Positions 39,612-59,555 of a stretch of DNA of 64,000 nt are shown in pieces. The notes below the pieces were generated by a model. The model was not told the origin of the DNA. It was given only the letters and a program-made list of their open reading frames with translations, and ran no database searches. Each line of letters begins with the position of its first letter. The stretch's first letter is position 1. The stretch lies in sequence record MK308675.1. One strand, given 5' to 3'. The position numbers and the translations under genes were made by a program.

Positions 39612-40610
39612 ATGGCTTTATTACCGTTTGATGAAACCGGTAAACTCGCATCTAACTTGAAGCGAGAATCCCATACCGTTAACAGTGTAAACGTTAACTT
39701 CCATAACTTTATCCTTCCGGACTGGGCACCGTTCTTTAAGACGGGCTTTACAGTCTTCCATGTAGAGTCAGGTCGTTACCTGGACGAAGGCGTAGATTTC
39801 TTCTTCTCGCATTACTTCGAACTGGCCGATGACAAACTGGCCGATAAAGTTTATAGTTCCATTACTTTCTTTGATAAGAACATTACTGGTACATTCCAGC
39901 TATCAATGCAGTCGTTAGGCGGAGACTTTGTAGACTCTGCAACTCAGGCTTTAGAAAGTGGCTTAGATACTCTGGCAAACCTTAGTGCGGTACGCTGGGA
40001 AGATATTGTTACTCCTCCTACTTTCCCCGTGACTTCGCACGAACACGTAGTGACTGGCGTGGAAGGCGTAAACCGTCACCTAGAAGAGATGACGAAGATT
40101 CGTGAAGCAATTGAGAAGATGTGGGATGAGCTTACTCTTTCCGACATCACGGATTTCGATTCAGAGTTCCGTGCTCCGCTGCTATCTAGCTTAAGTGCCT
40201 TAACCGCAGCAATCGTTGCTGACAGTCGTCCACGTGACCTGCCGCATTACTACTCGCTGTTGTTCACCGACGACGCCTCAGGCGCAAGTGATGTGGATTT
40301 AGGCGTAGTAACTCAAGGTTCTTGGGTACAGCTACCTCTGACTATGTTAGTCGCCCAACCTGGCGAGTACAAGCTAACGCACAACATCGGTGCGGAGATT
40401 GAAGCTCCAGCCGACATTAAAGTGCTGTATCGTTGGACCTTTAACGGTGTCCCTGTTGGACGCTCAATGGCAAACGGCGCTATACACACCATCAATGCAA
40501 ATACGCAAGTTCGCTTAGAAGCGAAAGTAATTGGTGCGGATACCACTAAGTTCCTACTAGCGTCCGCTGAACATGCTTCTGGCATCGAAGGCACGTTCCT
40601 TTCAAACTAA
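39612..40610 (+). CDS. baseplate/tail-fibre attachment protein (phiKZ-type FD.TG..ASN family), paralog 1
   Basis: N-terminus LPFDETGKLASNL..E.H...ILPDWAPFF; W..I..PPTFPV..HEH motif. Confidence 0.7.
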   Translation: MALLPFDETGKLASNLKRESHTVNSVNVNFHNFILPDWAPFFKTGFTVFHVESGRYLDEGVDFFFSHYFELADDKLADKVYSSITFFDKNITGTFQLSMQSLGGDFVDSATQALESGLDTLANLSAVRWEDIVTPPTFPVTSHEHVVTGVEGVNRHLEEMTKIREAIEKMWDELTLSDITDFDSEFRAPLLSSLSALTAAIVADSRPRDLPHYYSLLFTDDASGASDVDLGVVTQGSWVQLPLTMLVAQPGEYKLTHNIGAEIEAPADIKVLYRWTFNGVPVGRSMANGAIHTINANTQVRLEAKVIGADTTKFLLASAEHASGIEGTFLSN

Positions 40611-40620
40611 GGTGATTTAA

Positions 40621-41547
40621 ATGGCTTACACAGATTATAACTTCGACCCTACAGCCGAAGCGCCTGCCAACCTCATCTCTCAAGAGGTACATGCGTTGGA
40701 CATGGCTACGTTTGTAGGCGTCATTCCTGACCAAGGTGCCTTCTTTGAAAAGGGACTGGTCGTGGAAGCACGAGCGAGTTCGTCTGACCCTTGGGTTGAA
40801 CTAACTCCTTATTTCGACTTTGTCTTCTCTCCTCCATTCGTAGATGCCGGTGCGAGAACAACCCGTAAACAGGTATTCTCTTACATCGTGTTGAATGAAG
40901 ACCGAGGCGTCTATTCCGACGTCCGTTTAACATACCAAGCAATCGGTAAGTACCGCGATTCAGAAATGTTCACTTTACTAAATGCAGCTACTTTCGACCG
41001 CAGCCTGTCTGCTGAATGGGTAGCGTTCTCGAGCTACATCGACACGATGTCGCACGTGACGCGCGAAGAGACATTGGTTGGGAAGGGTACTCTAGAAGTT
41101 CTAGCCGCAATGGTAGATAAGTGGACTGAAGCTATCCAGAACCCGCACGCTCAAGGGAAGAACCTAGGGCAAGACGTGGCTCGCTTAGAACAGAAAGTCG
41201 CCAAAGCACTAACGACAGATGCTTACGCCGAACTAACCGCACAGAATGACTTCAGTCAGGCAGTTGTTTCAGGTACAGCATACGAAGTGAAAGTTACTGA
41301 CGACGAAGTAGAGCTACATAAAGGCATGCTTCTAATCAAGTCGTCAACAGGGGATGCGTATAGCGTAGACGTACTAGGCCGTAAAGCCGGCTCTACTGTG
41401 CACTCTGCTTTATTTAGCCAGAGCCATAACAACGGGGTTTTAGGGACCGTAGCCGTCACTCGCTCTTCTGACGCAATTGTTATCCGCGTGACTCCTTCTG
41501 TCGCAGGCACCATGTACTATAAAACTGTTTCAGAAATCAGAGGCTAG
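40621..41547 (+). CDS. baseplate/tail-fibre attachment protein, paralog 2
   Basis: N-terminus YNFDPTAEAPANLISQEVH..IPDQGAFF. Confidence 0.65.
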   Translation: MAYTDYNFDPTAEAPANLISQEVHALDMATFVGVIPDQGAFFEKGLVVEARASSSDPWVELTPYFDFVFSPPFVDAGARTTRKQVFSYIVLNEDRGVYSDVRLTYQAIGKYRDSEMFTLLNAATFDRSLSAEWVAFSSYIDTMSHVTREETLVGKGTLEVLAAMVDKWTEAIQNPHAQGKNLGQDVARLEQKVAKALTTDAYAELTAQNDFSQAVVSGTAYEVKVTDDEVELHKGMLLIKSSTGDAYSVDVLGRKAGSTVHSALFSQSHNNGVLGTVAVTRSSDAIVIRVTPSVAGTMYYKTVSEIRG

Positions 41548-41552
41548 TAAAG

Positions 41553-43115
41553 ATGAATAATCTTCGTAAATACATAGGGCTAAAGTTAGCCCATTGGGGT
41601 AAGTTCGTGTTCCCTTACGGCGCGATGACCGCCCAAAGAACCACTGACGGAGAAGACGGCGCCGCATTTATCGACTCCGACTTAAACGCTTTAAGACTGC
41701 ATTTGGGCGGGACATATAAACAGCAAGCCTCGTTGGTTTATAATCCTGCGGCCATTGTCTCCGATACGAACGAAACCGTCCCAGGTATGCTCCGTGCGGT
41801 TGATACATCTGGCGGCCCTATTGTTGTAGACCTAGACCCGACTCTTCCTGCGGGCTCAATGGTGGGCTATATTGACGTTACGGGTACGTGGGCAACGAAT
41901 AAGTTTTCTCTAAGGGCAGCCGCGAATATCCAAGGCGAAGCCGTTAAGGAGTATACCACGGCGTTTGGGTCCATTCAGTTAATCAAGCATGCGACTGCCG
42001 GCTGGATTCCATTTGGTGGCGGAGTAGGTGGCGGAGAAGGAGGCTCGGGAATTGGCCTCCCGGAAGGGGAGCTGGTCCATGGTACGTCCTATACCTTAAA
42101 GGTAGGTGTCCCTGCGTTACTCGACTTAGGCAAGACCTTCACAACGACCGGGTTTAACGTTCACTTTGAAAGAACGATGGATTACACTGCGGCCGATTGG
42201 GAATATACGCTGCCGAACGTCACATCGCTCCACTTACCTGAAGTCTATAACGTGAAAGCCGACCCCACGCAATCCGGTGACGCTGTGGCCGACCCAGAAG
42301 CCGGCCACTGGAAACTACCTGCCGACCCTGGACGTGCTATCCTAAAGCACCCTACCTTAAAGAAATGGATGCTCGTCCGTTTGGATGTCGCTCAAGAGTT
42401 CTTCCTTCAGATTGACGAAGAAGAATACGACCACCCTGCGAGAGTACAGACATGGGCATCAGTCGATGCCGGTACGGGCGAAAGGACTATTCTGCCAAAC
42501 GCCGAAATAAAACTAACAGACCTGACTTTAACTCTGCCTTTACCACCAAGTGGCGCAGTGGGAGATACGGTCGCATTCTACGACATATGGAAACTCGCTT
42601 CATTCGCGAATGTGATTCTAGAGGTAGACGGCGCGCGGTCTTTAGACATGGACGGGAGAAGCTTTGCTATCGACGTCGATGGTGCCTCCGCCGAAATACA
42701 AGCCGTGCAACAGCGTGGCTGGGTAGCGGTCCGCTGGAACGTCGGCGCCGACCCGATGAATGACGAAGCCCCACATAGTAACTTAGTCGTAGGCAGCATA
42801 AGTCACGACTCTACTGACGACTACACGTCATCCAATGGTTCAATCGAGCCAACTACGGAAGGCAGTGACGTCAAAGTAATGAATATTACCGAAGCAACCA
42901 CAATTCAGCCCCCACTTTTGAAGTCAGGTCCTGTTACTTGGCTCACTTACAAAATCGTACAAGGCAACACAGCATACCCTGTGGAGTTTACTAGCGATTA
43001 CGTAATCGTTGATGGGGTAGAGGCCTCCAAGGCACCTAACTCAGTTACGTGGGCCAGAGTTCTGGTCTCGGGTGACGGTAAGTACGATGTGTGGTTGTCT
43101 TCACGTCCTTTATAA
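41553..43115 (+). CDS. tail fibre adaptor/anchor protein
   Basis: Two DTSGG..V.L P....G..V...D...(W/F)ATN-type domains; C-terminal domain resembles the 139-aa protein at 48842. Confidence 0.55.
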   Translation: MNNLRKYIGLKLAHWGKFVFPYGAMTAQRTTDGEDGAAFIDSDLNALRLHLGGTYKQQASLVYNPAAIVSDTNETVPGMLRAVDTSGGPIVVDLDPTLPAGSMVGYIDVTGTWATNKFSLRAAANIQGEAVKEYTTAFGSIQLIKHATAGWIPFGGGVGGGEGGSGIGLPEGELVHGTSYTLKVGVPALLDLGKTFTTTGFNVHFERTMDYTAADWEYTLPNVTSLHLPEVYNVKADPTQSGDAVADPEAGHWKLPADPGRAILKHPTLKKWMLVRLDVAQEFFLQIDEEEYDHPARVQTWASVDAGTGERTILPNAEIKLTDLTLTLPLPPSGAVGDTVAFYDIWKLASFANVILEVDGARSLDMDGRSFAIDVDGASAEIQAVQQRGWVAVRWNVGADPMNDEAPHSNLVVGSISHDSTDDYTSSNGSIEPTTEGSDVKVMNITEATTIQPPLLKSGPVTWLTYKIVQGNTAYPVEFTSDYVIVDGVEASKAPNSVTWARVLVSGDGKYDVWLSSRPL

Positions 43116-43125
43116 GGAGTAAGGA

Positions 43126-46100
43126 ATGAATCCCGAAGCCAAGCAAGTTGGCCATTTAGAGAGCGACGTTAAAGGTCGCTCTTTTGACCGATACAAAATA
43201 AAAGGCTCTCTGTCTTTAAACCCGCCTTTGGGCGGAGTGCAACCGCCTTTTCTAGCATATACGCAAAAGGATGGAAACCGCCAAATAGGCACTGTCTCAC
43301 TTTGGATACGTCGAAGAGGTGTGGCAAACAAGTCCCCCTCTACAACGGACGAGACTATATTTAGCCATCAGGCGTCATCGACTACGGCCTCTTACGGCGG
43401 AATGGGATTCGATTCCAGCGGCCATCTAGCCCACTTCATGTCTGACGGCACCGCTACGCAGTACGGCATGATAACGAAAGAGCGCTTTGTAGACTGTTCT
43501 CGCTTCTACCATATTGTGGTTCACTGGAATACATGGATATCGGATGCTAACCAACGCATGCGCATGTTCGTTGACGGCAAGGAAATCAAATCGTTCATTC
43601 ACTTTACCATGCCGCCGCTCGGCTACCAGGGGAAAGTGCATAATGCGGCTTATCCGTTTACCATCGGTCACGTTCCGGGACTGTCTGCTTATAATTACTT
43701 CGCTTTAAATGCCGAGATTGCAGACTTTGCCCTAGTTGATGGCCAGGCACTATTCCCGAAAGACTTTGGGCACTTTGATACCCAAGATAACTGGCGTCCA
43801 AGCTTCCCGAGCTTCGAAGGATGGGGACCTAACTCTCTGTTTTTGACCTGGGATAAACAGGCTAACGGAATGACCTCGCATGTCATTAATCGCCCTTCGC
43901 AATATGCCCCGGATGAGACCGACGATAAGAAGCCTATCTCTACGGTGCCTACGCCAGGTATTAAAGCCGACATCACCATACACAAGTCGTACAACCACAC
44001 GTCAAACCAACATATGTTCTTGCAGGACTCAGTCCGCGGAGACGGCTGGTTCACTACGTTCTCAGAAGCTACGATTAACTCGCGCTACCATGGTCGACCT
44101 GCGCCGGCACCCAATGGGGAAGATGAACACTTAAGGTTCAGCGGCTCCTTTAACTGGGAGAAACGTACGGATAATGAGCCGACATATTGGACACACTTCC
44201 TCTTTGCTACGGGACCCGAACACGGCATCAGTATCGTTCCTCACGATGGTACCGCCGCAGAAAAGAGAATTGAGCACGGTCTGGGGCGTAAGCCGGACTT
44301 AGCCATAAACGTGGTCCAGGAATCCGGAGCAAGCTACCCGATGTATACTTGGGCCAAAGGCTTTACGGATACTAACGACGATTCTCGCCTAAATCTCCAT
44401 AATGGCTCAGGGGTCTTTACAGCACCTGGAGCAGACCACTGGCGAAACTCCTTAACGGACGAAACCTATTTCGGATTCGGTAGTGGGAGCGCGAACAACA
44501 GCGCATCTGGTAGAAACTTCATCACGTATTTCTTTGCGTCCGTTCCCGGAAAGTCCCAGTACTTTAAATGGGAACATCGCGGGTCTAACACTAGGACGCG
44601 TTTTGAATGCGGTTTCCGCCCGCGCTTCTTCTTCTGGAAGACGGCAACGCCGTCGGGTGAGACTGCCGATGTCGGTGCTTGGGTGGTTGTTGACTGTCGA
44701 GACGGTACGGCTTGGGAATTCGACCGCACGCGCGGCGGATACTACTCTTACAGTGCGACTTACTTCAATCCGGCTGAGGTAGACGATACCGGTTTCTCAA
44801 TGGGCCACGACCTGGCCAGCATAGACGGCATTATCATGGCCTTCGCGGACGAGTCGGACCTAAACCGCTGTGCCAAGTCAATAATGAACGATAACCGTGT
44901 TCGGCCGATTAACTTCCATGGCACGGCGGACATCAGTGACGCAACTCCAGATAACCCAGGTGTAATCCTTAGCTGGAATAATGCTAACCGCTGGGCATCC
45001 GCAAACGGAGCAGCTCACCAGAGCCAGAGAGCCACGGAAGGCGGTTATCGCCTAGAGCTTTCACATACGCGTACCAATACCGCGGTAGGCTTAGGGCTTT
45101 CTCGCTCATTGCCGGAAAGCGGTAAGTGGTACTTTGAGGTAGATAGTTGCTATACGTTCGTTTTATGCGGCTACCAATTCATGGACGGTGCCCAGAACGG
45201 ATACGACTACTACGACTACGTCAAAGATACGCCGGGGTACGTATATGCTGGCGGCGTAAAGAACACACGCAGAAGTCACTACATTGCCTTGGATATGGAT
45301 GCGCGGACATTACATGTCACTACCTCCGACGGCAAGGTGTTCACTCTACCGGTTCCAGACGCCGACGAACGCACTACGGGCGATTATCAGTTCTTCGTAT
45401 CCTCTAACGTCGCGTCTAAAGATACGGCCTCCATCAACTTAGGGCAGCGCCCTTTTGTAAATGAGATGCCAGTGGGCTACCGTCCTCTGAACGACCTCGG
45501 CAACTATCAGGAAAACTCGATTGAGCCTGAGAAATACTTCGACAACTTCATTTACAATGGCCTGCAAGCTTGCCATCAGGACATGTCGTCTACGTGGGCT
45601 TACTGGGGCGTGAAGTCTTTTGAAATCGACGGCGAACTTTACCTAGCCCGCCGCCGCACGCACAGGATAGCGAACCCGCCGGTTGCCGCGGACTGGGTTA
45701 ACCAAGGACATGTGGAAATATGGCTCTGGAACAGACATACTAAGAAGTTCAACGAACATCATACCTTGGCCATGCCTTCGGGCGGATACGCAATAGATGT
45801 GAAGTCGATAGATGGAGAGACGTATCTTTCTGCGGGGTCACACTACAACGGCTCACACGACATCACTGGCGGAGCATACCTCTTTAGATGGAACCGGACA
45901 CACAAGAGATTCGAAACATTAGTTCGCCGCAATGAAGGTACCGGGCACATAGGAACCGAGATTTTCGACATCGATGAAGACCATTTGGGCTGGATAATGT
46001 CATCTCACCGCAACGGTACTGTCTTTGACTTGGATTCTCACTTCTTTAAAGTGGAGAAACAAACAGGCAATGTTGTAAAGGTCCAGGCTATCCATACGGC

Positions 46101-48831
46101 CGGGGCACACGGCGTATCGACTGAGGTCTTTGAGGGAGAAACGTGGGTCACTATTTCGGAGTATCGTACTGGCGCAAATGGAGCTCAACTTGGAAACATT
46201 CCGCAAAGAAGTTGGCGCTATGACCCGACCACCAGCGAGTTAGTGGCCGCCCCAGGTCTAACTACTGGACAGTATGCCGCAGTGGTACAGAATAAACTAT
46301 TCGCGCACTCGGGTAACTTATATTGCCTGGTTTCATCTCGTCATACGGCCAACGTTTGGACGGAGTATACTAGCCTGGGCATGTTTAAGCTAAATGCCGC
46401 TAAAGACGGCTGGGACCAAATCACCTCTATGGGCTCAATTGGCGCCAGCGAAGTAAGCGTACTGAAGAAAGATGACGGAGTTTACATCAGTGTCCCTTGT
46501 TATTACAACGGCACGTCAGTAGCATCCCGTCAGAACTACGTAGCGTTTAGCACGATTGCTTTCTTTAACCCGCAAACAGAGACGTTGATTTCCCACGAGA
46601 CGTGGCGTGGTGTGGCTCAGACAGGTGCCGACTTCTTTGAGGACGATGGTGACTTCTATTTGGCCACGACGTCTACTTTGGACGATAGCTACAGCGCGAC
46701 ATGGATGGGCGTGCAAAAGTTTGCCGATAAGAACTTATCTGGATTCATTACTCGGGCCCAGTTCGGCAGTGACTCAGTCTACGACTCTGTGCGCATTGAT
46801 GACGCCGACGGAGAGTACGTCCTGATGGTAGAACACGTGAAAGAATCTTCTCGCAGTCAAAGATTGTCAGACATTCAAATTCACGAGTACAACCCGACCA
46901 CAAAGAGTATATCGCGCATAGGCACGCGCTCATCTCACGGCTGTCATGCCTTGGACGCTAAGAAGATTGGCGGCAAGTGGTACCTCGCGTCGGTCAATCA
47001 TTCAAACGCCAGTACCGACACTACCGGCGGCGCCATTAACATTTATGTCTGGAATGAAACTACCAAAGACTTAGACTTCGTCATATCGTCACCCGTACAC
47101 GGCTGTATAGAGGCGAAGTGGTTCGAGTCCGACGGTAAGACATATGTTTCCATTACGTCTAATCGCAGCGGTTCGAACTATGGACAGCCACTGGGTACGT
47201 TCTTGTTCGACCCAGCGTCTGTAGGTAGCGAGCTCACAGTCAAACCGACTTTGTCGGGCTCAGGCCATTTCGGTCTAGACCTTTATGAGTTCAAAGGAGA
47301 AACCTTCGGCTTTATCGGCGGTTCAGCCGCGTCTTCTTCTGGCGGCTATCATACGGCCTTTATAAAGTGGTATCCTGACTCGGAGACTTGGGGCGTTCAT
47401 CAAAACCAAATCGCAGGTTCCAATATTCCGCATGGTTACGGTCGCTTCTTTGAAGCGAATGGACGACTGTATCTTCTTCTGGGCGCAGACCGCATCGGAG
47501 GCACACCAAACGCAACAACGGTTTGCCAGCTTTACCGTTACAGCGAAGCGACGCAGAGGATGTATTTCGTCAATGAGGTTCATGCTCCCGGAGCACGAAA
47601 CTTCAATGTCGTTGAATACGAGGGCGACATCTATGCGGCCATGGCTACGTGGGGTACGCCCGAGAGTAACAATCGCGGACTGGACCCGTATGACTGGACG
47701 GACAACCTCCTGCTTAAGTTTGATGCAGCAGACGAGACGTTCTACCTAGAAGCGGTTTATCCAGCGCACCATTCGGTTTGTCATAAGTTACACCTGATGA
47801 ACGACGGTAATCTGTTCATAGCGGCGCATAGCCACACGACGAACAATACCTTTAGTGCTCCTAACTTATGGCTACAAGTTAAGAAAGGTGCAGCGGCGAT
47901 GCAGCACAACACCTTGACGGTCCCGACCGACTTTGTCTGGCTCAAGTCGCTTTCTGGCCCTGCTAACTCACATAAGCAGTTCGCTAAGAAGGTAGGTTGG
48001 GAAAGGCAACTAACGTCCGACACGGCAGACGCGGCAAGCTTTACTAACGGCCAGCATATTTTCGGTGTCTACAAACACGGAGTTCGTTTAGCGTATTCGT
48101 CATCAGCAAACGTCGCGCGCCTAGCTTACTCGGTGTATGCCTGGAAAGCTGCCCCAGAGGCGGGCTTTGATTGTACAGTCCACGAAGGTAGTGGCGGCAC
48201 ACAGCATGCCCTCCCTTACGATATGGGCGACAAGCAAGCCACGCTCGGCATCATTAAGAGCATCGATGTTTCCGGCAACTGGATGGTTCAAGGACCTATC
48301 TTGAAATCTGTAAACAACCGAGTGCTTTACTTAAATGGTACCGGGGCCGCACAAGACAACTCATCCGACGGCTACATGTCTATGTTCTACAACGTAGGCC
48401 ACTACGTTCTCGGGAACCAGGATGTGTCTAACGACCACGTAAACCGCAATGGGCAGAAATACATGGGCCTATGGTTCCGTAGTATAGAAGGCCAGGTTAA
48501 AGTGGGTCGCTATTCGGGCACGGGCCAAGTCGATGGCGATTTCGTTCCGCTGTCATTTAGCGCCCGCTGGATAATGATAAAGAGTGAAGCGAGTTCCAAC
48601 AACTGGGCGGTCTATGACTTGAACAACGGAGCTAACGTTCGAAACGACGTGACGCACATCATCTATCCTAATCTCTCGCAGAGTATGGGAGAGCCGGTAA
48701 CGGATAAGATAGAAGTAAGTGCCGGCGGTTTCCGCCCTATCGGTGCCGGTAACATCCATAACCAAAACGGACAGCCTTATGTCTTCATCGCCATAGCGGA
48801 CGACCCGTTTGGTACATCTAACGCTTACTAA
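43126..48831 (+). CDS. large tail fibre / receptor-binding protein: LamG, beta-rich repeat, SPRY, 14 EAR/EPTP-like repeats, beta-rich repeat
   Basis: LamG TVSLWIRR...YHIVVHW..RMFVDG..IADFALVDG; SPRY SGKWYFEV; 14 repeats of about 55 aa at about 45580-47890; C-terminus YVFIAIADDPF. Confidence 0.75.
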   Translation: MNPEAKQVGHLESDVKGRSFDRYKIKGSLSLNPPLGGVQPPFLAYTQKDGNRQIGTVSLWIRRRGVANKSPSTTDETIFSHQASSTTASYGGMGFDSSGHLAHFMSDGTATQYGMITKERFVDCSRFYHIVVHWNTWISDANQRMRMFVDGKEIKSFIHFTMPPLGYQGKVHNAAYPFTIGHVPGLSAYNYFALNAEIADFALVDGQALFPKDFGHFDTQDNWRPSFPSFEGWGPNSLFLTWDKQANGMTSHVINRPSQYAPDETDDKKPISTVPTPGIKADITIHKSYNHTSNQHMFLQDSVRGDGWFTTFSEATINSRYHGRPAPAPNGEDEHLRFSGSFNWEKRTDNEPTYWTHFLFATGPEHGISIVPHDGTAAEKRIEHGLGRKPDLAINVVQESGASYPMYTWAKGFTDTNDDSRLNLHNGSGVFTAPGADHWRNSLTDETYFGFGSGSANNSASGRNFITYFFASVPGKSQYFKWEHRGSNTRTRFECGFRPRFFFWKTATPSGETADVGAWVVVDCRDGTAWEFDRTRGGYYSYSATYFNPAEVDDTGFSMGHDLASIDGIIMAFADESDLNRCAKSIMNDNRVRPINFHGTADISDATPDNPGVILSWNNANRWASANGAAHQSQRATEGGYRLELSHTRTNTAVGLGLSRSLPESGKWYFEVDSCYTFVLCGYQFMDGAQNGYDYYDYVKDTPGYVYAGGVKNTRRSHYIALDMDARTLHVTTSDGKVFTLPVPDADERTTGDYQFFVSSNVASKDTASINLGQRPFVNEMPVGYRPLNDLGNYQENSIEPEKYFDNFIYNGLQACHQDMSSTWAYWGVKSFEIDGELYLARRRTHRIANPPVAADWVNQGHVEIWLWNRHTKKFNEHHTLAMPSGGYAIDVKSIDGETYLSAGSHYNGSHDITGGAYLFRWNRTHKRFETLVRRNEGTGHIGTEIFDIDEDHLGWIMSSHRNGTVFDLDSHFFKVEKQTGNVVKVQAIHTAGAHGVSTEVFEGETWVTISEYRTGANGAQLGNIPQRSWRYDPTTSELVAAPGLTTGQYAAVVQNKLFAHSGNLYCLVSSRHTANVWTEYTSLGMFKLNAAKDGWDQITSMGSIGASEVSVLKKDDGVYISVPCYYNGTSVASRQNYVAFSTIAFFNPQTETLISHETWRGVAQTGADFFEDDGDFYLATTSTLDDSYSATWMGVQKFADKNLSGFITRAQFGSDSVYDSVRIDDADGEYVLMVEHVKESSRSQRLSDIQIHEYNPTTKSISRIGTRSSHGCHALDAKKIGGKWYLASVNHSNASTDTTGGAINIYVWNETTKDLDFVISSPVHGCIEAKWFESDGKTYVSITSNRSGSNYGQPLGTFLFDPASVGSELTVKPTLSGSGHFGLDLYEFKGETFGFIGGSAASSSGGYHTAFIKWYPDSETWGVHQNQIAGSNIPHGYGRFFEANGRLYLLLGADRIGGTPNATTVCQLYRYSEATQRMYFVNEVHAPGARNFNVVEYEGDIYAAMATWGTPESNNRGLDPYDWTDNLLLKFDAADETFYLEAVYPAHHSVCHKLHLMNDGNLFIAAHSHTTNNTFSAPNLWLQVKKGAAAMQHNTLTVPTDFVWLKSLSGPANSHKQFAKKVGWERQLTSDTADAASFTNGQHIFGVYKHGVRLAYSSSANVARLAYSVYAWKAAPEAGFDCTVHEGSGGTQHALPYDMGDKQATLGIIKSIDVSGNWMVQGPILKSVNNRVLYLNGTGAAQDNSSDGYMSMFYNVGHYVLGNQDVSNDHVNRNGQKYMGLWFRSIEGQVKVGRYSGTGQVDGDFVPLSFSARWIMIKSEASSNNWAVYDLNNGANVRNDVTHIIYPNLSQSMGEPVTDKIEVSAGGFRPIGAGNIHNQNGQPYVFIAIADDPFGTSNAY

Positions 48832-48841
48832 GGAGTAAGAA

Positions 48842-49261
48842 ATGCGTTCATTTTCTAAGAAATTTGGACGCGGCCCTGCCTCTCAAATCAGTAAAGGCAC
48901 CAAGAGCGCGGGTTTCCGCGCCGATGGTGCGCTCCTGGTCACAGGCAGTGTCGTAAACACCCCTATCACTTTGCCCTATGCTGCAAACGTGGAGCTATCC
49001 TTAGCAGATAGCGATACGCAGCATCTAGAACTAGCTGGCGATGTGCATATTACTGCGCCGGAGCTAAGAGTAGGTGGGTCCTGGAAAATCTATATAAGGC
49101 AAGATGCGACAGGCGGACACGATGTAACCTTCGGGGCTAACCTAAAGAACATCTATGGTACACCGGTGTTGTCTGCCGCAAACGCGACGACGTTAATGAC
49201 CCTAATCGGTCGAGGGGATGGTAATTTTGATTACACCCTAACGGCCGTTGCCACGATTTAA
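48842..49261 (+). CDS. small tail fibre anchor/adaptor protein
   Basis: GGSWKIYIRQDATGGHDVTF motif seen in phage fibre N-terminal domains. Confidence 0.6.
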   Translation: MRSFSKKFGRGPASQISKGTKSAGFRADGALLVTGSVVNTPITLPYAANVELSLADSDTQHLELAGDVHITAPELRVGGSWKIYIRQDATGGHDVTFGANLKNIYGTPVLSAANATTLMTLIGRGDGNFDYTLTAVATI

Positions 49262-49281
49262 ACTAAACAAACGAGGTTAAC

Positions 49282-52200
49282 ATGCTTCTACCAAACATTG
49301 ACGGTGGGGTTGTTAGTAAAGCAAGGGGCGATATCAATGTCGCCCCTCCTCTTTACGACCCGGAAGGCTCAATATTCCTAGATGGCCGCGACGGCGAAGG
49401 CGGCATGTTACAGTTCCGCCCGGAAACTCCATCGGACTCTACGAAATGGTGTTATTCTATCTGGATAAAGAATGGTGGGTTCAGCTACAGTGACCGGCAC
49501 TTCACGCTGCTTGGCGCTGTAAACCAGAACGGTATTCCGTCGGCACTTAACACTTCTCGGCTTGACGACAACATGGCATATATAGCCATCGACGATTCGA
49601 GCACCTTTAAGTTAAGTAATATTACGAATAACGCAACTATTGACACCTACACTCTCCCGATTAAATTTAAAGACTCGGCCGACTGGCAGCATTTGTTTGT
49701 TCGTTTTGACACCACTCGCGACATACTAGAACTGTTCGTCAATGGGGTTTTCGCAGGCGATGTCGTCGTGGCTAAAGATATCTTGAGGTTCGGCGATACT
49801 TCCCACTATCACTACATCGGAGCAGATTCGTATTCTCGTACTCGAGATGCCTATTTTACAGACCCAGCACTTATCTTCGGGGAGGGGCAGCTGGATGTTA
49901 ATGATTTTGGTTACACTGACGAACACGGCGTGTGGCGTCCGAAGGACCTAACGCAATCTTTACCGAAAAGTATTTGGAAAGGGAGCTCTTTTTACCTACA
50001 GCCGGGTAAAACGCCTAGGTTTACCGAAGAGGCCGAAGGCGGCATCGCGCATGGTCACAAATATCAACGTGGTTTCCAGAGATTCAGAGTCGGCTTTGAG
50101 CCAGACATGGTTATGGTTTTCTCTACCAAGTATGGTTTTGCCGAAGGCGCCGACTTTACCTTTAAAGAGTTGCCAGAACTCTCCATCAATGCATCAAACG
50201 AAGTGGGTGCCGTCGCGGACCCAAATGGGGTAAAATATTTCCACGATGGTTTTTCCATGGGAACTTCCGGGAACTTCCATAACGAGAACGGTTTCCCTTA
50301 CTCTTACTTGGCCTTTAAGAAAGGAGCTAAGTACGGCATCGACATCATTCATTATACGGGTGACGGCCAAGACAATCGCCGGGTCGCCCACGAGCTGGAA
50401 CAGCGCCCGCTTTCTACTTGGATTATTCCAGTCGACGTCAACGCCAACCGAACATATAACCATATCGAGTTAGGACCCAATCGCGTCATGACCCTTGAGG
50501 ATGGCGAGCTAACCGCAAGCACGGGCTACATACGTAACCTGACGGACAAAGAAGTTGTGGTCAGCAACTCAGCGAACGTCAATGCCAGCGGCGTACGCTA
50601 CGCAATGATTTGTTTTGGTAATAAACAGGGCGTTATGTCCGTGGAACATCTTGTTGGTCCCGGCAATAGTCTACATTCTGGGTCCACTGAGACGCCGATT
50701 GATTTCCACGGGCTGGTTGCATTTACTCGCCGGATGGCAGGTAGCGGTAATCGCGCACTAGACATTATTACCAACGACTCCGTGCGTTCTATTTCGAGCG
50801 CGTACGCGGTGGCCTATCCGAACAACAGTGCCAATAACCCCCAGTTCTTCAGCAGCAATCAGTTAAACTGGTTAACGACCGTCGCCGAAACAATCGGCTA
50901 TGCCGCTAGGGCAGATACGCGGTCAATCTTTAAGGCATGTAAGTCTGTAGTCAACGACGTTCAGTTAATCCCTCGTCGTATGTCGACGCATGATGCTTTG
51001 TCCGACGATAGTCCTTTCAGGAACTTAGGCGTCTGGAAAAACGCAGAGACGAATAGCACTTCGAGCTTCCACAGCGGCGGGCTTGGGGCGCACCTAGGCA
51101 ATGGCGCGACGGCACAGGCCAAATGGAGCAAGTCGATACGCGGACGCTGTTACTGGGAAGTCAACGTCGAGTCCTCAGGCAGCGGCTACTACTATTTGGT
51201 CGGCTTAACGGGCAACCCGGGCTACACTTCGGCTGCTTACATCGACTGGTCGTACTATGTCGTTTATTACGCTAATAATGGAACAATACTCAGTTCTCCT
51301 CCAGGCACTGGCGGTGAGCAATTAGGGACGACAACCGGCGGCGGTCATAGACATATTTACAGTATGTTGTGGGACCCGGAAATACGTACGCTTAAAATGT
51401 ATCGTGACGGAAGCCTTCTTTTCGAACAAGACATGAGTGCTTATGATTTACCGGACTCGATATATCCGTACATACGCCACGCCTCGGGAGCACAATCCAC
51501 AGTCTTCGCGATGAACGACGGGCGCTTCCCGTTTTTGTATCCTGAGCTTGCCGATAATGCACCTTCTCTTATGGAGGATGGCCTTAAGCCAATCGCGGAC
51601 ATAAAGAACAGCCAGGTAGCTTTTAAGCCGGTTGCGTACAAAGCGGGCGATAACTCGGGCCATCTGTTCTCTTATACTGGACAGCCGGCATCCACGACAT
51701 GTAACATGTTCGAGGCAGACGGTAAACTGTATCTCTATAAGGCCAACTTCGGTGATGGTTCGACGCACCACGTCAACGATGAGCTAATTCGCATTAATGA
51801 GGACGGCTCTTTCGAAGTAGTGCTGGAAGGGCAGTACGGCAGCGCCACCTATGACACTCGCCATTTCGAGTCCAACGGCAGACATTTCCTCATTGTCTGC
51901 GACTACAATAAGGGGGCCTGGGGGAGCGCTAACACAGGTATCGGCATAATCACTTACGAGTTTCATCCTAAGACAGAAACGCTAACGACTATCTCGGTTT
52001 TACCTAACGGTGGCGTGAACAGGCTATCGCTTTACGAGTTTAACGGTGAACTGTTCTTAGCTCGTTGTGTGTGGGGCACCTCGTATGAAAACATCCGCAT
52101 TTACAAATGGCAGCCGGACCACTTAACCTGGAAGGAAGGAGGCTACGAGGCTCTTACAAATGCCACCGCGGCACAGTTCTGGGAACGTGACGGAACACTC

Positions 52201-53649
52201 TATCTGTCTTGTGCTGCTTTGATGACGGCGGGCCGTAAGAGTGCGACGTATCGAGTCGACCCGGAAACAGGGAACCTTGCTCTCGTGTTCGCAGGGCCTA
52301 ACGTAAACCAAGCGCGCTCTTTGGCAGTCAATACGGCTAAAGACGGTAACACCTACATGTTGATGTCATACACGGGAACGAGCAACAAGCTCTTCAAGTG
52401 GGACCCTGTTAACGAGGACTGGATTGAGGATGTCGCGCCTGGGTCCTGGGCAAACTGCTACGGAATGAGCACCTTCAAAGAAGGAGAAGAGGTTTACTTC
52501 GCAATGGCGAATGCGGAATATACTTCCTCAAACGTACTGCATCACTTTGACCCGGTTACGAAGGGGCTGACTCCTATCGTTACGGCGGCTTCACAAAACG
52601 CACACGATGCTCAAAGCATTAAGTATCGCGGCGTGTGGTATACGGCATTCGCGAACCACCGCACGTCGAGCAGCTATGCCCAAGGCTACATCACTGTGGT
52701 GACCTCTAAAGTTGACCCCGACACAGGAATATTGAAAGCAGGTCGCTTCATTGAGATGCCTAAGGGCGCTGACTTAATGTGGGTTAAGGACAGAACCACA
52801 CCGGGCATTGCTCATCGTTTGTACAGTCCTAAGATGGTAGATAAGGAACTCTATCCGGGCCTAAACCTACCTGCTGGAAATTCGGCCACCGTAGACTGGC
52901 ACGATGACGGCGTGTTGTTACAAGGCGGTTATACCGGACACAATACCGGCAACATTAACCACGTGGCATACTTCTGGAAAACTGGCCCTGAGTACGGCAT
53001 TGATTTCTCTTTGCAAACCTCGGGGCCGGATGGAACAACCGCGGTGACACACGAACACAATTGCGGCGACATCCCGGAAGTTTTGATGATAAAAGGACTA
53101 ACGAATAACTCATCGTGGCATGTCAGGTTTGAGGATTTTGCGGATACCGATACCTTGCTCTTGGACACGAACACCGTAAGGTATACGTTGCCTGGCGCTA
53201 AGTATTGGGATAAGGCAAACTTCAATGAGAAGTCCGTATCGCTGTTCGCAGCGAATGCAATTGGTGTCAACCAAGGATTCGCAATGTTGGCTATTCGTTC
53301 CGTCCCGGGCTATTCAAAAACCGGTTTTTATTGGGGCAATGGCAACGCGTCGGGTATCGATTTTAACCTTGGATTTAAACCAGCATGGATGTTGGTCAAG
53401 ATTGAAAACGTCGTCGGTAACGATTGGGTAATCTTCGATTCGTCGCGTTCACCGTTTAACAAGGACGGGATGGCGAGATTGCGAGTTAACGGTACTCAGG
53501 TTGAGGACGCAGCGGAAAATAACGACATCTTCTTTACGTCAACTGGCTTTAAGTGTGACGGTACGGGAAGTTCCATGAACCGACTGAATGCTAAGTACAC
53601 ATTCATCGCGTTTGCGGAAAACCCGTTCGAACACACCAACGCTCGATAA
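49282..53649 (+). CDS. large tail fibre / receptor-binding protein: LamG, beta-rich repeat, SPRY, 7 EAR/EPTP-like repeats, beta-rich repeat
   Basis: LamG CYSIWIK..WQHLFVRFD..LFVNG; SPRY GRCYWEV..LWDPEIRTLKMYRDG; 7 repeats at about 51670-52700; C-terminus YTFIAFAENPF. Confidence 0.75.
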   Translation: MLLPNIDGGVVSKARGDINVAPPLYDPEGSIFLDGRDGEGGMLQFRPETPSDSTKWCYSIWIKNGGFSYSDRHFTLLGAVNQNGIPSALNTSRLDDNMAYIAIDDSSTFKLSNITNNATIDTYTLPIKFKDSADWQHLFVRFDTTRDILELFVNGVFAGDVVVAKDILRFGDTSHYHYIGADSYSRTRDAYFTDPALIFGEGQLDVNDFGYTDEHGVWRPKDLTQSLPKSIWKGSSFYLQPGKTPRFTEEAEGGIAHGHKYQRGFQRFRVGFEPDMVMVFSTKYGFAEGADFTFKELPELSINASNEVGAVADPNGVKYFHDGFSMGTSGNFHNENGFPYSYLAFKKGAKYGIDIIHYTGDGQDNRRVAHELEQRPLSTWIIPVDVNANRTYNHIELGPNRVMTLEDGELTASTGYIRNLTDKEVVVSNSANVNASGVRYAMICFGNKQGVMSVEHLVGPGNSLHSGSTETPIDFHGLVAFTRRMAGSGNRALDIITNDSVRSISSAYAVAYPNNSANNPQFFSSNQLNWLTTVAETIGYAARADTRSIFKACKSVVNDVQLIPRRMSTHDALSDDSPFRNLGVWKNAETNSTSSFHSGGLGAHLGNGATAQAKWSKSIRGRCYWEVNVESSGSGYYYLVGLTGNPGYTSAAYIDWSYYVVYYANNGTILSSPPGTGGEQLGTTTGGGHRHIYSMLWDPEIRTLKMYRDGSLLFEQDMSAYDLPDSIYPYIRHASGAQSTVFAMNDGRFPFLYPELADNAPSLMEDGLKPIADIKNSQVAFKPVAYKAGDNSGHLFSYTGQPASTTCNMFEADGKLYLYKANFGDGSTHHVNDELIRINEDGSFEVVLEGQYGSATYDTRHFESNGRHFLIVCDYNKGAWGSANTGIGIITYEFHPKTETLTTISVLPNGGVNRLSLYEFNGELFLARCVWGTSYENIRIYKWQPDHLTWKEGGYEALTNATAAQFWERDGTLYLSCAALMTAGRKSATYRVDPETGNLALVFAGPNVNQARSLAVNTAKDGNTYMLMSYTGTSNKLFKWDPVNEDWIEDVAPGSWANCYGMSTFKEGEEVYFAMANAEYTSSNVLHHFDPVTKGLTPIVTAASQNAHDAQSIKYRGVWYTAFANHRTSSSYAQGYITVVTSKVDPDTGILKAGRFIEMPKGADLMWVKDRTTPGIAHRLYSPKMVDKELYPGLNLPAGNSATVDWHDDGVLLQGGYTGHNTGNINHVAYFWKTGPEYGIDFSLQTSGPDGTTAVTHEHNCGDIPEVLMIKGLTNNSSWHVRFEDFADTDTLLLDTNTVRYTLPGAKYWDKANFNEKSVSLFAANAIGVNQGFAMLAIRSVPGYSKTGFYWGNGNASGIDFNLGFKPAWMLVKIENVVGNDWVIFDSSRSPFNKDGMARLRVNGTQVEDAAENNDIFFTSTGFKCDGTGSSMNRLNAKYTFIAFAENPFEHTNAR

Positions 53650-53661
53650 GTAAAAAGAATA

Positions 53662-53689
53662 CCTCCCTAGTCTCTCGGGACTAGGGAGG
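53662..53689 (+). terminator. intrinsic terminator closing the fibre cassette
   Basis: CCTCCCTAGTC-TCTCGG-GACTAGGGAGG then TCTTTATTTTT. Confidence 0.8.
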
Positions 53690-53754
53690 GTCTTTATTTT
53701 TTAACAAATCAAATAGTGCTATACACTTATTTCTTCTGGCCGGAGAACTATTAA

Positions 53755-54744: not shown

Positions 54745-54753
54745 GGAGCACCC

Positions 54754-55200
54754 ATGAAGATTACTTTTCATTTCTTCGATAACCGCGCAATCGGTTCGCT
54801 ACTTATCAAAGCACGCCTTTCCGAGCATTTCTCTCATGTGGGAATGGAGTTTGAGAACGGCGCGTTTATTCACAGCACTATGCTGCACGGCACCGTCATG
54901 CAGAAACTTAGCGACCAGCCAACTGAGCCTCTTGCGTCGGTAACTATCGATGTAGACGAAGAAGCGTACATGGAAGCGTACGAATGGGCAGTTCATCAAG
55001 TGGGTGGCAAATACGACTACAAGGGAATCATTGGTTTCATGTTCGCTAAGAAATGGAACGATGAGAATGCGTTCTTCTGTTCTGAGCTAGGACGTAAAGT
55101 ATTTGAAATCGCGACAGGGAAAATCCTGAAGTATTATAATTTGGTTACGCCCGGCGAATTACGCATGCTTGTAGCTATGCACAATCTAGACGGCAAGTAA
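54754..55200 (+). CDS. permuted papain-like amidase (YaeF/YiiX-type permuted NlpC/P60)
   Basis: SHVG (His) before G.KYD and FCSEL (Cys) motifs in permuted order. Confidence 0.8.
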   Translation: MKITFHFFDNRAIGSLLIKARLSEHFSHVGMEFENGAFIHSTMLHGTVMQKLSDQPTEPLASVTIDVDEEAYMEAYEWAVHQVGGKYDYKGIIGFMFAKKWNDENAFFCSELGRKVFEIATGKILKYYNLVTPGELRMLVAMHNLDGK

Positions 55201-55216
55201 CTTAAGGGAAAAGACT

Positions 55217-59551: not shown

Positions 59552-59555
59552 AGTC

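What the first reader, a model, noticed from the sequence alone, without database searches (positions are those of the whole stretch)
45580..47890. Fourteen EAR/EPTP-like repeats (two 7-bladed propellers) in a phage fibre with TSPEAR-like LamG plus EAR architecture
Seen: 14 tandem about 55-aa repeats such as HGCHALDAKKIGGKWYLASVNH...INIYVWNETTKDL and AGAHGVSTEVFEGETWVTISE...SWRYDPTTSEL. Established: the EAR/EPTP consensus (ga.dve.F.i.g..yLavAn...IY.Wn) builds the 7-bladed propellers of animal LGI1, TSPEAR and ADGRV1, and TSPEAR pairs it with a laminin-G domain. I do not know of a characterised phage receptor-binding protein with this fold. Inference: a multivalent lectin-like or protein-binding head, for a host surface glycan or for animal mucus/tissue.
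Basis: partly seen in the sequence, partly recalled or inferred. Interest (0 to 1): 0.8.

Follow-up and report, generated by a model that had tools for sequence, protein, structure and literature searches.

The report
EPTP/EAR propellers in a vibriophage fibre
A 1901-residue tail-fibre-type protein of a jumbo Vibrio phage carries an inserted cassette of fourteen divergent EPTP/EAR repeats, forming two seven-bladed propellers of the fold known from the human epilepsy protein LGI1; this is a rare, uncharacterised but not unprecedented fibre module.

Summary
The window is Vibrio phage vB_VmeM-Yong (290 kb, host V. mediterranei). ORF 43126..48831 (1901 aa, deposited as hypothetical) contains 14 repeats averaging 55.6 aa at aa 823-1600.

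Evidence that they are EPTP/EAR repeats:
- Pfam EPTP scores above its cutoff for the whole protein and for each half.
- 27 of the 29 nearest relatives among 1.84 billion proteins are EPTP proteins.
- An AlphaFold model of the second propeller finds LGI1 EPTP as its top seven PDB matches.

The two propellers (aa 813-1596) are a cassette. The syntenic orthologue in phage GR7B has the same N- and C-terminal parts with nothing between them. A paralogous fibre, 49282..53649, carries one propeller.

The scaffold is LamG-like N-terminus, DUF7483, SPRY-like module, C-terminal DUF7483. It is a widespread marine-phage fibre family, so the likeness to TSPEAR is convergent domain co-occurrence.

EPTP fibres are rare. 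Only the Yong phages and GR7B match among 50,697 phage records; pir03 was listed as 'EAR-like' in 2020. Function is inferred, not shown: an exchangeable, multivalent binding module on a side fibre.

The parts
43126..48831 (+). Gene for the 1901-aa fibre-type protein (QAX96161.1, deposited as hypothetical protein)
   Evidence: ORF list. [quoted passage not shown] PHROG 19943 virion structural protein E 5e-49 and PHROG 24898 tail fiber protein E 8e-31.
43144..43830 (+). N-terminal LamG-like (Laminin_G_3 type, ConA-like jelly roll) domain, aa 7-235; assigned through an orthologue
   Evidence: A profile of the N-termini of this protein, its paralogue and three metagenomic orthologues aligns to the N-terminus of GR7B_00155 (hhalign probability 99.9%, E 2e-36). 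That N-terminus passes Pfam Laminin_G_3 at 28.8 bits against a cutoff of 27.6 (aa 39-200). There is no direct Pfam or PDB sequence hit for this protein itself.
44216..44703 (+). Internal partial copy of DUF7483, aa 364-526
   Evidence: Pfam DUF7483 E 1.8e-15, profile positions 124-271. PHROG 24898 at aa 366-530.
45016..45450 (+). SPRY-like module, about aa 631-775; weakly supported for this protein
   Evidence: A four-sequence profile (this protein, its paralogue, P0005, P0006) hits the SPRY domains of RanBP9 and RanBP10 (E 2e-6 to 6e-6). Pfam SPRY passes its cutoff in P0006 and GR7B_00155 at the equivalent place. A profile of this protein plus P0005 alone finds nothing in the PDB, and it aligns only weakly to the paralogue group.
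45562..47913 (+). Inserted cassette, aa 813-1596, that holds both propellers
   Evidence: phmmer against the syntenic orthologue GR7B_00153 (1089 aa): aa 10-812 match its 14-781 (339.9 bits) and aa 1597-1900 match its 791-1088 (72.8 bits). The 784 residues between them correspond to about 9 residues in GR7B.
45592..46767 (+). EPTP/EAR propeller A: repeats 1-7, aa 823-1214
   Evidence: Pfam EPTP 24.3 bits for aa 801-1190 alone. BLASTP to the seven canonical EPTP repeats of P0002 covers 358 aa, 28% identity, E 2e-23. It aligns blade for blade with propeller B. No reliable model exists for this half.
46768..47925 (+). EPTP/EAR propeller B: repeats 8-14, aa 1215-1600
   Evidence: Pfam EPTP 23.0 bits for aa 1191-1600 alone. 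AlphaFold2 model of aa 1207-1600: pLDDT 63.6, pTM 0.76, 27 strands. Foldseek PDB ranks 1-7 are all LGI1 EPTP, E 3e-12 to 8e-11, TM 0.64 by query and 0.75-0.76 by target.
47902..48807 (+). C-terminal DUF7483 domain, aa 1593-1894
   Evidence: Pfam DUF7483 E 4e-44. tblastn finds it in 37 phage records (Pelagibacter, Synechococcus, Roseobacter and Vibrio phages). The proteins are annotated tail fiber, virion structural, LamG-like or ConA-like.
48842..49261 (+). Conserved 139-aa gene between the two fibre genes
   Evidence: PHROG 4549 tail fiber C-terminal part. Homologous to GR7B_00154, E 2e-23, at the same position in that phage.
49282..53649 (+). Paralogous fibre protein (1455 aa) with one propeller
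   Evidence: Pfam DUF7483 E 4e-40. Collinear with GR7B_00155 over its whole length, 289 bits. GR7B_00155 carries Laminin_G_3, SPRY, EPTP and DUF7483.
51679..52761 (+). Single EPTP-like propeller of the paralogue: 7 repeats, aa 800-1160
   Evidence: Seven units align in register with the fourteen of the first protein. The independent repeat HMM places 7 matches at aa 807-1132 and scores 34.8 bits against a maximum of 6.9 in shuffles. Pfam EPTP itself gives no hit here.

Best explanation
ORF 43126..48831 encodes a large side-fibre (tail or baseplate fibre) subunit of a jumbo myovirus. It is built on a scaffold common in marine phages: a LamG-like N-terminal domain, an internal DUF7483 copy, a SPRY-like module and a C-terminal DUF7483 domain. 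A 784-residue cassette is inserted between the SPRY-like module and the C-terminal domain. The cassette is fourteen divergent EPTP/EAR repeats that fold as two seven-bladed beta-propellers of the LGI1 type.

Shown: the family, the repeat number, the fold of one propeller, the cassette boundaries and the fibre-gene context.

Inferred: the propellers are exchangeable ligand-binding modules. If the fibre is a trimer, like most fibres, it would display six of them. They would give multivalent, probably reversible attachment to a structure on or around the Vibrio host. The number of modules (0, 1 or 2) differs between orthologous and paralogous fibres, as is usual for adsorption specificity modules. 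By analogy with LGI1-ADAM22 the ligand could be a protein held on one face of the propeller. A glycan is equally open.
For: Family:
- Pfam EPTP scores 31.2 bits against a cutoff of 21, and each half passes alone.
- phmmer against 1.84 billion representatives gives only 31 hits. Of the 29 outside the window, 27 match Pfam EPTP. The best, P0002 (E 1.2e-39), has seven canonical repeats (EPTP E 6e-90).
- The full-length orthologue P0005 scores 163 bits on EPTP and also has DUF7483.
- A profile of the region plus its relatives hits only LGI1 strongly in the PDB.

Fold:
- The AlphaFold2 model used only window sequences in its alignment: pTM 0.76.
- Foldseek ranks 1-7 are LGI1 EPTP, ahead of Kelch and lactonase propellers.

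Cassette:
- GR7B_00153 matches both sides of the region but lacks it.
- The paralogue and GR7B_00155 have one propeller at the same site.

Fibre:
- PHROG tail fiber and virion structural families match.
- DUF7483 is shared with annotated tail fibres of marine phages.
- The neighbours are tail-fibre-type genes. A baseplate assembly protein lies at 32702..33784.
- P0002 ends in a Peptidase_S74 chaperone domain and tail-fibre PHROG C-termini. EPTP propellers therefore sit in a second, unrelated fibre scaffold.
- A third fibre in the module is made of CBM_5_12 carbohydrate-binding repeats. The module as a whole therefore looks like an adhesion apparatus.
Against: - No experiment or proteome shows that the protein is in the virion.
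- No ligand is known for any prokaryotic or viral EPTP protein.
- The propellers are internal, and the conserved DUF7483 domain, not the propeller, is at the C-terminal tip.
- Individual repeats are too divergent for any single one to pass Pfam on its own.
- A repeat profile made of window sequences alone does not reach LGI1 in the PDB; it gives only weak lactonase-type hits.
- The model is of medium confidence (pLDDT 63.6). Only propeller B was modelled usefully; the single-sequence model of both propellers failed (pLDDT 42).
- Trimer stoichiometry is assumed, not shown.
Confidence: 0.72

Rival explanations
1. The repeats belong to another propeller family (Kelch, WD40, FG-GAP, BNR/sialidase, SBBP, lactonase) and the EPTP match is cross-talk within the beta-propeller clan.
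For: - No single repeat passes Pfam EPTP on its own.
- The window-only repeat profile gives its best, still weak, PDB hits to 6-phosphogluconolactonase-type seven-bladed propellers (E 0.006).
- 5 of 29 relatives also match Pfam Lactonase weakly, and 2 each match SBBP and Kelch_6.
- The one protein returned by the last word-based search was an FG-GAP/VCBS protein.
Against: - EPTP is the only propeller family that Pfam reports for this protein, and it passes the curated cutoff three times over: whole protein and each half.
- 27 of 29 nearest relatives are EPTP proteins, with E-values down to 7e-104.
- The orthologue P0005 scores 163 bits.
- Foldseek puts seven LGI1 entries first, with TM 0.64 by query against 0.43-0.50 for Kelch and 0.55-0.58 for lactonases.
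Confidence: 0.05
2. The propellers are enzymes, such as a lactonase-, sialidase- or GH43-like depolymerase that degrades a host surface polymer, and not passive binding modules.
For: - Many phage fibres and spikes carry depolymerases.
- Foldseek lists sialidases, GH43 enzymes and lactonases among the significant matches (ranks 25-50).
- BFVD lists phage sialidase-domain and lactonase-type propeller proteins as structural neighbours.
Against: - Those matches rank well below LGI1, which is not known to be an enzyme (my own knowledge of the LGI1 literature).
- No Pfam or NCBIfam enzyme family matches the protein.
- The repeats are poorly conserved between the two propellers (22% identity), which does not suggest a shared active site.
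Confidence: 0.1
3. The propellers are structural: spacers, knobs or docking sites for other virion parts or for the neighbouring small proteins. They would have no role in recognising anything outside the virion.
For: - They are internal, not terminal.
- A conserved small gene (48842..49261) always lies between the two fibre genes and could encode a partner.
- The known EPTP ligand in animals is a protein (entry titles of the LGI1-ADAM22 complexes).
Against: - The orthologous fibre in GR7B does without them entirely, so they are dispensable for building this fibre type.
- The copy number of 0, 1 or 2 at one site is the pattern expected of accessory specificity modules.
- The same module occurs in an unrelated fibre scaffold, P0002.
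Confidence: 0.13
4. The LamG plus EAR combination reflects common ancestry or gene transfer with animal TSPEAR-type proteins, and the target is animal tissue or mucus.
For: - Both domain types are present in one protein.
- V. mediterranei and V. coralliilyticus are associated with marine animals (my own knowledge).
Against: - The LamG-like domain belongs to the general fibre scaffold and occurs without EPTP in GR7B_00153 and many marine phages.
- About 590 residues with other domains separate it from the repeats.
- All 29 sequence neighbours are metagenomic or bacterial proteins. Canonical EPTP propellers occur in at least 25 bacterial genomes of many phyla.
- Identity to LGI1 in the structural alignment is 9-11%.
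Confidence: 0.03

Closest known systems
LGI1 EPTP (EAR) domain, PDB 5Y2Z / 5Y31 / 9KZC
   Same: - Same Pfam family (PF03736).
- A seven-bladed propeller built of repeats of roughly 45-55 residues.
- It is the best structural match of the model (TM 0.75-0.76 by target).
- It is the only strong PDB sequence hit of the family profile.
   Different: - 9-11% identity in the structural alignment.
- LGI1 has one propeller after an LRR domain in a ~550-aa secreted animal protein.
- Here two propellers in tandem lie inside a 1901-aa phage fibre protein.
- The ligand here is unknown.
TSPEAR (animal protein with a laminin-G-type domain and EAR repeats)
   Same: A ConA-like/LamG-type domain and EAR repeats occur in one polypeptide.
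   Different: - I could not compare it directly, because no TSPEAR sequence or structure came back from any search.
- Here the two domains are about 590 residues apart, with DUF7483 and a SPRY-like module between them.
- There are 14 repeats here, and a C-terminal DUF7483 follows them.
- The LamG scaffold exists without EAR in related phages.
Bacterial and metagenomic EPTP proteins (for example P0004, P0029; loci in Desulfonema magnum and in Desulfobacterales, Rhodospirillales and Parcubacteria MAGs)
   Same: - They are the nearest sequence relatives of the cassette (25-30% identity).
- Most have exactly seven repeats; some giant proteins have 13, 14 or 20.
   Different: - Their repeats are far more regular (Pfam E down to 7e-104, against 2e-7 here).
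- They have other partner domains: PAN, PKD, Big and PEP-CTERM.
- Their function is also unknown.
P0002, a metagenomic 1034-aa protein with EPTP x7 plus a Peptidase_S74 chaperone
   Same: - It is the best hit of the cassette (E 1.2e-39).
- It has a propeller inside a tail-fibre-type protein: PHROG tail-fibre C-termini and the endosialidase-chaperone domain.
   Different: - Its scaffold is unrelated: no LamG and no DUF7483.
- It has one propeller.
- I could not fetch its contig, so a phage origin is inferred from its domains only.
Vibrio phage vB_VcorM_GR7B proteins GR7B_00153 and GR7B_00155
   Same: The gene order is syntenic: a ~500-aa gene, fibre 1, a ~140-aa gene, fibre 2. GR7B_00155 is collinear with the paralogue 49282..53649 and carries Laminin_G_3, SPRY, EPTP and DUF7483.
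   Different: GR7B_00153, the orthologue of the protein studied here, has no propeller at all. All these proteins are deposited as hypothetical.
Vibrio phage vB_VhaM_pir03 ORF199, listed as 'EAR-like protein' (IPR009039) in PMC7765460
   Same: It is a propeller protein in a related jumbo vibriophage, and it was already labelled EAR-like in print. It matches the cassette weakly (BLASTP E 9e-5; repeat HMM E 3e-5).
   Different: - It is 548 aa with no DUF7483.
- It lies next to a 6418-aa ORF, not in a fibre pair.
- Pfam EPTP scores 18.1 bits, below the cutoff.
- The paper lists it in a table and does not discuss it.
Marine-phage LamG/DUF7483 fibres (for example Pelagibacter phage HTVC011P 'tail fiber protein' and cyanophage 'LamG-like jellyroll' proteins)
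   Same: They share the C-terminal DUF7483 domain at 24-31% identity.
   Different: I did not scan these proteins for EPTP one by one. A tblastn with a canonical EPTP propeller matched none of their records. They are much shorter proteins.

Membership tests
EPTP/EAR repeat family (Pfam PF03736, InterPro IPR009039) | Match to the family HMM above the curated whole-protein cutoff | tested here: met
   31.2 bits against a cutoff of 21 for the whole protein. aa 801-1190 alone scores 24.3 and aa 1191-1600 alone scores 23.0. The score is a sum of weak repeats; none passes on its own.
EPTP/EAR repeat family (Pfam PF03736, InterPro IPR009039) | Tandem repeats of about 45-55 residues, in sets of seven | tested here: met
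   14 units, mean 55.6 aa, in one register. An independent repeat HMM scores 63.3 bits against a maximum of 11.8 in 1000 shuffles. Halves A and B align blade for blade.
EPTP/EAR repeat family (Pfam PF03736, InterPro IPR009039) | The nearest sequence relatives are clear family members | tested here: met
   27 of 29 hits of an exhaustive phmmer search match Pfam EPTP. The best hit is E 1.2e-39, with seven canonical repeats. The orthologues P0005, P0003 and P0006 score 163, 81 and 117 bits.
EPTP/EAR repeat family (Pfam PF03736, InterPro IPR009039) | Seven-bladed beta-propeller fold closest to LGI1 EPTP | tested here: met
   Tested for propeller B only: AlphaFold2 pTM 0.76, pLDDT 63.6; Foldseek ranks 1-7 are LGI1. 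Propeller A rests on alignment to B and to P0002. The model of both together failed.
EPTP/EAR repeat family (Pfam PF03736, InterPro IPR009039) | Direct sequence-profile link from the window's own repeats to a solved EPTP domain | tested here: not met
   The profile of the 21 window repeats finds no LGI1 chain at E<=10 and only weak lactonase-type hits. The link to LGI1 needs the intermediate relatives.
Marine-phage LamG/DUF7483 tail-fibre family | C-terminal DUF7483 domain | tested here: met
   Pfam E 4e-44 at aa 1593-1894, plus an internal partial copy. Shared with 37 phage records.
Marine-phage LamG/DUF7483 tail-fibre family | N-terminal Laminin_G_3-type domain | tested here: inconclusive
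   There is no direct Pfam hit. hhalign gives 99.9% to the N-terminus of GR7B_00155, which passes Laminin_G_3 by about 1 bit. The PDB profile search found nothing.
Marine-phage LamG/DUF7483 tail-fibre family | Gene lies in a tail or baseplate structural module | tested here: met
   The same-strand block 39612..59551 holds genes with tail-fibre and virion-structural PHROG hits. A baseplate assembly protein is at 32702..33784.
Marine-phage LamG/DUF7483 tail-fibre family | Protein is present in the virion as a fibre | not testable with these tools
   No proteome or micrograph data are at hand. The only paper found that mentions the Yong phages (PMC7765460) uses them only for genome and protein comparisons.
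TSPEAR-like architecture | A LamG-type domain followed directly by one set of seven EAR repeats, as the whole protein | tested here: not met
   The domains are about 590 aa apart, with DUF7483 and a SPRY-like module between them. There are 14 repeats, and a DUF7483 follows them. The orthologue GR7B_00153 has the scaffold without EAR.
SPRY domain (PF00622) | Match to SPRY by HMM or profile | tested here: inconclusive
   Met for P0006 (35.1 bits) and GR7B_00155 (27 bits) at the equivalent site, and for a four-sequence profile against PDB SPRY domains. Not met for this protein plus its closest orthologue alone.
Kelch / WD40 / FG-GAP / BNR propellers | Match to any of those family HMMs | tested here: not met
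   Pfam reports no such family for this protein at E<=1, or at E<=10 for the two halves. Kelch domains rank below LGI1 in Foldseek with lower TM.

The most novel reading that the evidence does not exclude
The EPTP propeller is a mobile adsorption cassette that phages exchange between unrelated fibre scaffolds (LamG/DUF7483 fibres, S74-chaperone fibres), with a copy number of 0, 1 or 2 at one site. It would recognise a defined protein on the Vibrio surface through one propeller face, as LGI1 recognises ADAM22. That would give the first ligand and the first tractable non-animal model for the EAR domain.
Probability: 0.3. Interest if true: 0.6.

Novelty: new member of a known kind. Interest (0 to 1): 0.42.

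Why it matters
EAR/EPTP propellers are known from a few animal proteins linked to epilepsy, deafness and ectodermal disease. Only one ligand pair, LGI1 with its ADAM22-type receptors, is understood structurally (my own knowledge). This locus shows the fold used as an insertable module in phage fibres, at a defined site and with variable copy number. The closest relatives are in bacteria and metagenomes, not in animals. For phage biology it adds a rare module type to the catalogue of fibre domains, and it flags a three-fibre adsorption apparatus (two propellers, one propeller, CBM5/12 array) in a jumbo vibriophage. For the EAR field it offers small, soluble, non-animal homologues for structural work. 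It does not change any principle. The family label was already attached automatically, and a relative was already called EAR-like in print.

Tried and rejected
- Word-indexed protein searches gave no usable relatives in three tries: whole protein with a region, the cassette alone, and a 16-sequence alignment. They returned only the protein itself, nothing, and one FG-GAP/VCBS protein. Because of this, no deep alignment was allowed for structure prediction.
- The single-sequence AlphaFold2 model of both propellers failed (pLDDT 42). I did not search with it.
- phmmer of the whole protein against PDB sequences found nothing.
- The window-only repeat profile against the PDB found no LGI1.
- The N-terminal profile against the PDB gave only chance-level antibody hits.
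- A profile of this protein plus P0005 for the SPRY-like region found nothing in the PDB, and local hhalign to the paralogue group was weak. I therefore call SPRY in this protein 'SPRY-like' only.
- IMG/VR scans with P0002, P0005 and a canonical EPTP alignment found nothing. One alignment was too divergent to scan with.
- tblastn of the cassette against 50,697 phage records found only the four Yong isolates.
- The 30 metagenome loci related to the SPRY-like module carry no EPTP repeats, although many of those contigs are short.
- An unsupervised repeat iteration drifted into the unrelated CBM5/12 repeats of the third fibre. I replaced it with an HMM built only from outside sequences.
- NCBIfam gave nothing of use.
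- Literature searches for EPTP or EAR together with phage found no study.
Full report
[quoted passage not shown] Window position 43126 is record position 167126. The finding lies inside one ORF, 43126..48831 on the + strand, 1901 aa, deposited as a hypothetical protein. Its coordinates correspond to aa 819-1589.

**The repeats are real.**
- By eye and by alignment there are fourteen consecutive units of 53-60 residues (mean 55.6) from aa 823 to 1600.
- They share one register with each other and with seven units in the paralogous protein 49282..53649 (aa 800-1160).
- Conservation is low, at 10-22% identity between units. It is concentrated in a few columns: one Gly in 18 of 21 units, an aromatic or hydrophobic residue three positions later in 21 of 21, and a Pro and a Thr near the end in 11 and 12 of 21.
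- There is no DNA-level tandem repeat, so the array is old.
- As a control independent of the window, I built a repeat HMM from 70 repeats of ten metagenomic relatives. It places nine matches in this protein, all within aa 829-1515 and all in register, and seven in the paralogue.
- That HMM scores the region 63.3 bits against a maximum of 11.8 in 1000 shuffles, and the paralogue 34.8 against 6.9. The rest of the protein scores nothing.

**Family.**
- Pfam-A reports EPTP (PF03736) at 31.2 bits against a curated cutoff of 21. The two halves pass separately, at 24.3 and 23.0 bits. No other propeller family is reported. No single repeat passes alone.
- An exhaustive phmmer search of the 776-residue region against 1.84 billion representative proteins found only 31 proteins at E<=0.001.
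- Of the 29 hits outside the window, 27 match Pfam EPTP, with E-values down to 7e-104.
- The best hit, P0002 (E 1.2e-39), has seven canonical EPTP repeats. These align with propeller A over 358 residues at 28% identity.
- P0005 (1827 aa) is a full-length orthologue, aligned from residue 10 to the C-terminus, and scores 163 bits on EPTP. P0006 lies on the same contig. It is the orthologue of the paralogue and scores 117 bits.
- A profile of the region plus 15 relatives hits LGI1 and nothing else strongly in the PDB (5y2z_B, E 3e-18).
- A profile made only of the 21 window repeats does not reach LGI1. The window's repeats are therefore a divergent edge of the family, tied to it through intermediates and through the Pfam model.

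**Fold.**
- The single-sequence model of both propellers was useless (pLDDT 42).
- The word-indexed search returned no relatives, so the only alignment allowed held the three propellers of the window itself.
- With that alignment, AlphaFold2 gave propeller B (aa 1207-1600) pLDDT 63.6 and pTM 0.76. The model is all-beta with 27 strands.
- Foldseek against the PDB ranks seven LGI1 EPTP entries first (E 3e-12 to 8e-11; TM 0.64 by query, 0.75-0.76 by the 330-residue target).
- These are ahead of designed and Kelch six-bladed propellers (TM 0.43-0.50) and seven-bladed lactonases (0.55-0.58).
- Propeller A was not modelled usefully. Its status rests on its blade-for-blade alignment with B and with P0002.

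**Architecture and the cassette.**
- The C-terminus (aa 1593-1894) is DUF7483 (E 4e-44). A partial second copy lies at aa 364-526.
- A profile of the N-terminal 235 residues aligns to the N-terminus of GR7B_00155 (hhalign 99.9%, E 2e-36). GR7B_00155 is from Vibrio phage vB_VcorM_GR7B. That N-terminus passes Pfam Laminin_G_3 at 28.8 bits against 27.6.
- The stretch just before the repeats is SPRY-like. SPRY passes Pfam in P0006 and GR7B_00155 at the equivalent place, and a four-sequence profile hits the RanBP9/10 SPRY domains. For this protein and its closest orthologue alone the signal is not significant.
- The clearest result is a comparison with GR7B, which has the same gene order: a ~500-aa gene, fibre 1, a ~140-aa gene, fibre 2.
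- GR7B_00153 (1089 aa) matches aa 10-812 and aa 1597-1900 of this protein through its own residues 14-781 and 791-1088. The 784 residues between, which are exactly the two propellers, are absent there.
- The paralogue 49282..53649 is collinear with GR7B_00155, and both have one propeller at the same site.
- The same junction therefore holds zero, one or two EPTP propellers in closely related fibres.

**Is it a fibre?** The evidence for this is indirect.
- PHROG families 'tail fiber protein' and 'virion structural protein' match the protein.
- The DUF7483 domain recurs in 37 phage records from Pelagibacter, Synechococcus, Roseobacter and Vibrio phages. There the proteins are annotated tail fiber, virion structural, LamG-like or ConA-like.
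- The gene sits in a same-strand block, 39612..59551, of genes with tail-fibre-type hits. A baseplate assembly protein and a virion structural protein lie just upstream.
- P0002 ends in a Peptidase_S74 intramolecular-chaperone domain and in tail-fibre PHROG C-termini. An EPTP propeller therefore also occurs in an unrelated fibre scaffold.
- No virion proteome was available.

**How common is it?**
- tblastn of the cassette against 50,697 phage records finds only the four Yong isolates.
- tblastn of a canonical EPTP propeller finds those four plus GR7B.
- Three scans of IMG/VR found nothing.
- The closest viral predicted structures in BFVD are the protein itself, then proteins of 548 aa, 1457 aa and 1455 aa. 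Those lengths equal pir03 ORF199, GR7B_00155 and the paralogue.
- The 2020 paper on jumbo vibriophage pir03 lists its ORF199 as 'EAR-like protein' (IPR009039) in a table and does not discuss it (PMC7765460). That protein matches the cassette weakly and falls below the Pfam cutoff.
- The database's precomputed Pfam labels for this protein already include PF03736.
- Canonical EPTP propellers are present in at least 25 bacterial genomes of many phyla. Most have seven repeats; some giant proteins have 13, 14 or 20.
- Full-text searches found no paper on EPTP or EAR domains in phages.

**Mechanism.** The following are shown: the family, the repeat number, the fold of one propeller, the cassette boundaries and the structural-module context. 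The rest is inferred.
- The propellers are accessory ligand-binding modules displayed along a side fibre.
- The arguments are their presence or absence and their copy-number variation at one site between orthologous fibres, their recurrence in a second fibre scaffold, and their company.
- That company is SPRY and LamG-type beta-sandwiches in the same protein, and a third fibre, 55217..59551, made of CBM_5_12 carbohydrate-binding repeats.
- The one EPTP ligand known structurally is a protein, ADAM22 (entry titles; how it binds is my own knowledge). A protein receptor is therefore as plausible as a glycan.
- I found nothing that points to animal tissue or mucus.
- Because the conserved DUF7483 domain, not a propeller, forms the C-terminal end, 'head' is not the right word for the propellers.

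**Comparison and verdict.** This is a divergent member of the EPTP/EAR family in a member of the marine-phage LamG/DUF7483 fibre family.
- The TSPEAR resemblance fails as an architecture test. The domains are far apart, other domains intervene and follow, and the scaffold exists without EAR.
- The nearest relatives are prokaryotic, so I read the co-occurrence as convergent.
- The finding is real and tidy and is a good target for structural work. It is nevertheless an incremental addition to known fibre modularity. The label was already attached automatically, and a relative has been named EAR-like in print.
- Interest 0.42; novelty: new member of a known kind.

Noticed in passing
window 55217-59551 (+): The third large fibre-type protein (1444 aa) is built almost entirely of CBM_5_12 repeats (Pfam E 1.7e-34; PHROG 9851 tail fiber). 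This family is usually chitin- or carbohydrate-binding, which is notable for a phage of a marine Vibrio.
   Followed up: partly
window 40000-60000: G+C is 0.48-0.52 across the fibre module, against 0.43-0.47 in most of the rest of the window, although 14-18 kb also reaches 0.49. This may reflect a separate history or the amino-acid composition of the fibre proteins.
   Followed up: no
window 39612-40610, 40621-41547, 53755-54744 (+): Three paralogous proteins of about 330 aa share an N-terminal domain (phrog_2163 virion structural, phrog_13857 tail protein). One or two of them precede each big fibre group.
   Followed up: no
window 48842-49261 (+) and 41553-43115 (+): The 139-aa ORF between the two propeller fibres is homologous to the C-terminus of the 520-aa ORF upstream, and to GR7B_00154 and GR7B_00152. 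The small gene is conserved at this position in both phages. It may be a fibre partner or an assembly factor.
   Followed up: partly
window 54754-55200 (+): A 148-aa ORF inside the fibre module matches phrog_1128, which is annotated enoyl-CoA hydratase/carnitine racemase-like (E 1.5e-14). This is an odd family for this location.
   Followed up: no
L002 6946-8589 and 8605-27858 (Vibrio phage pir03, MT811961): The pir03 'EAR-like' propeller gene lies directly upstream of a 6418-aa giant ORF. The paper annotates that ORF as PARCEL/DUF285 repeats.
   Followed up: no
L005, L006, L012 (one Desulfobacterales MAG contig, CAZWPX010000024.1): Three separate loci on one bacterial contig encode giant proteins with 7, 14 and 20 canonical EPTP repeats. 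Tandem double and triple EPTP propellers therefore also exist in bacteria.
   Followed up: no
window 43126-48831 and 49282-53649: Each big fibre protein carries DUF7483 twice, as an internal partial copy and a full C-terminal copy (Pfam reports 2 stretches). This suggests an internal duplication of the scaffold.
   Followed up: no
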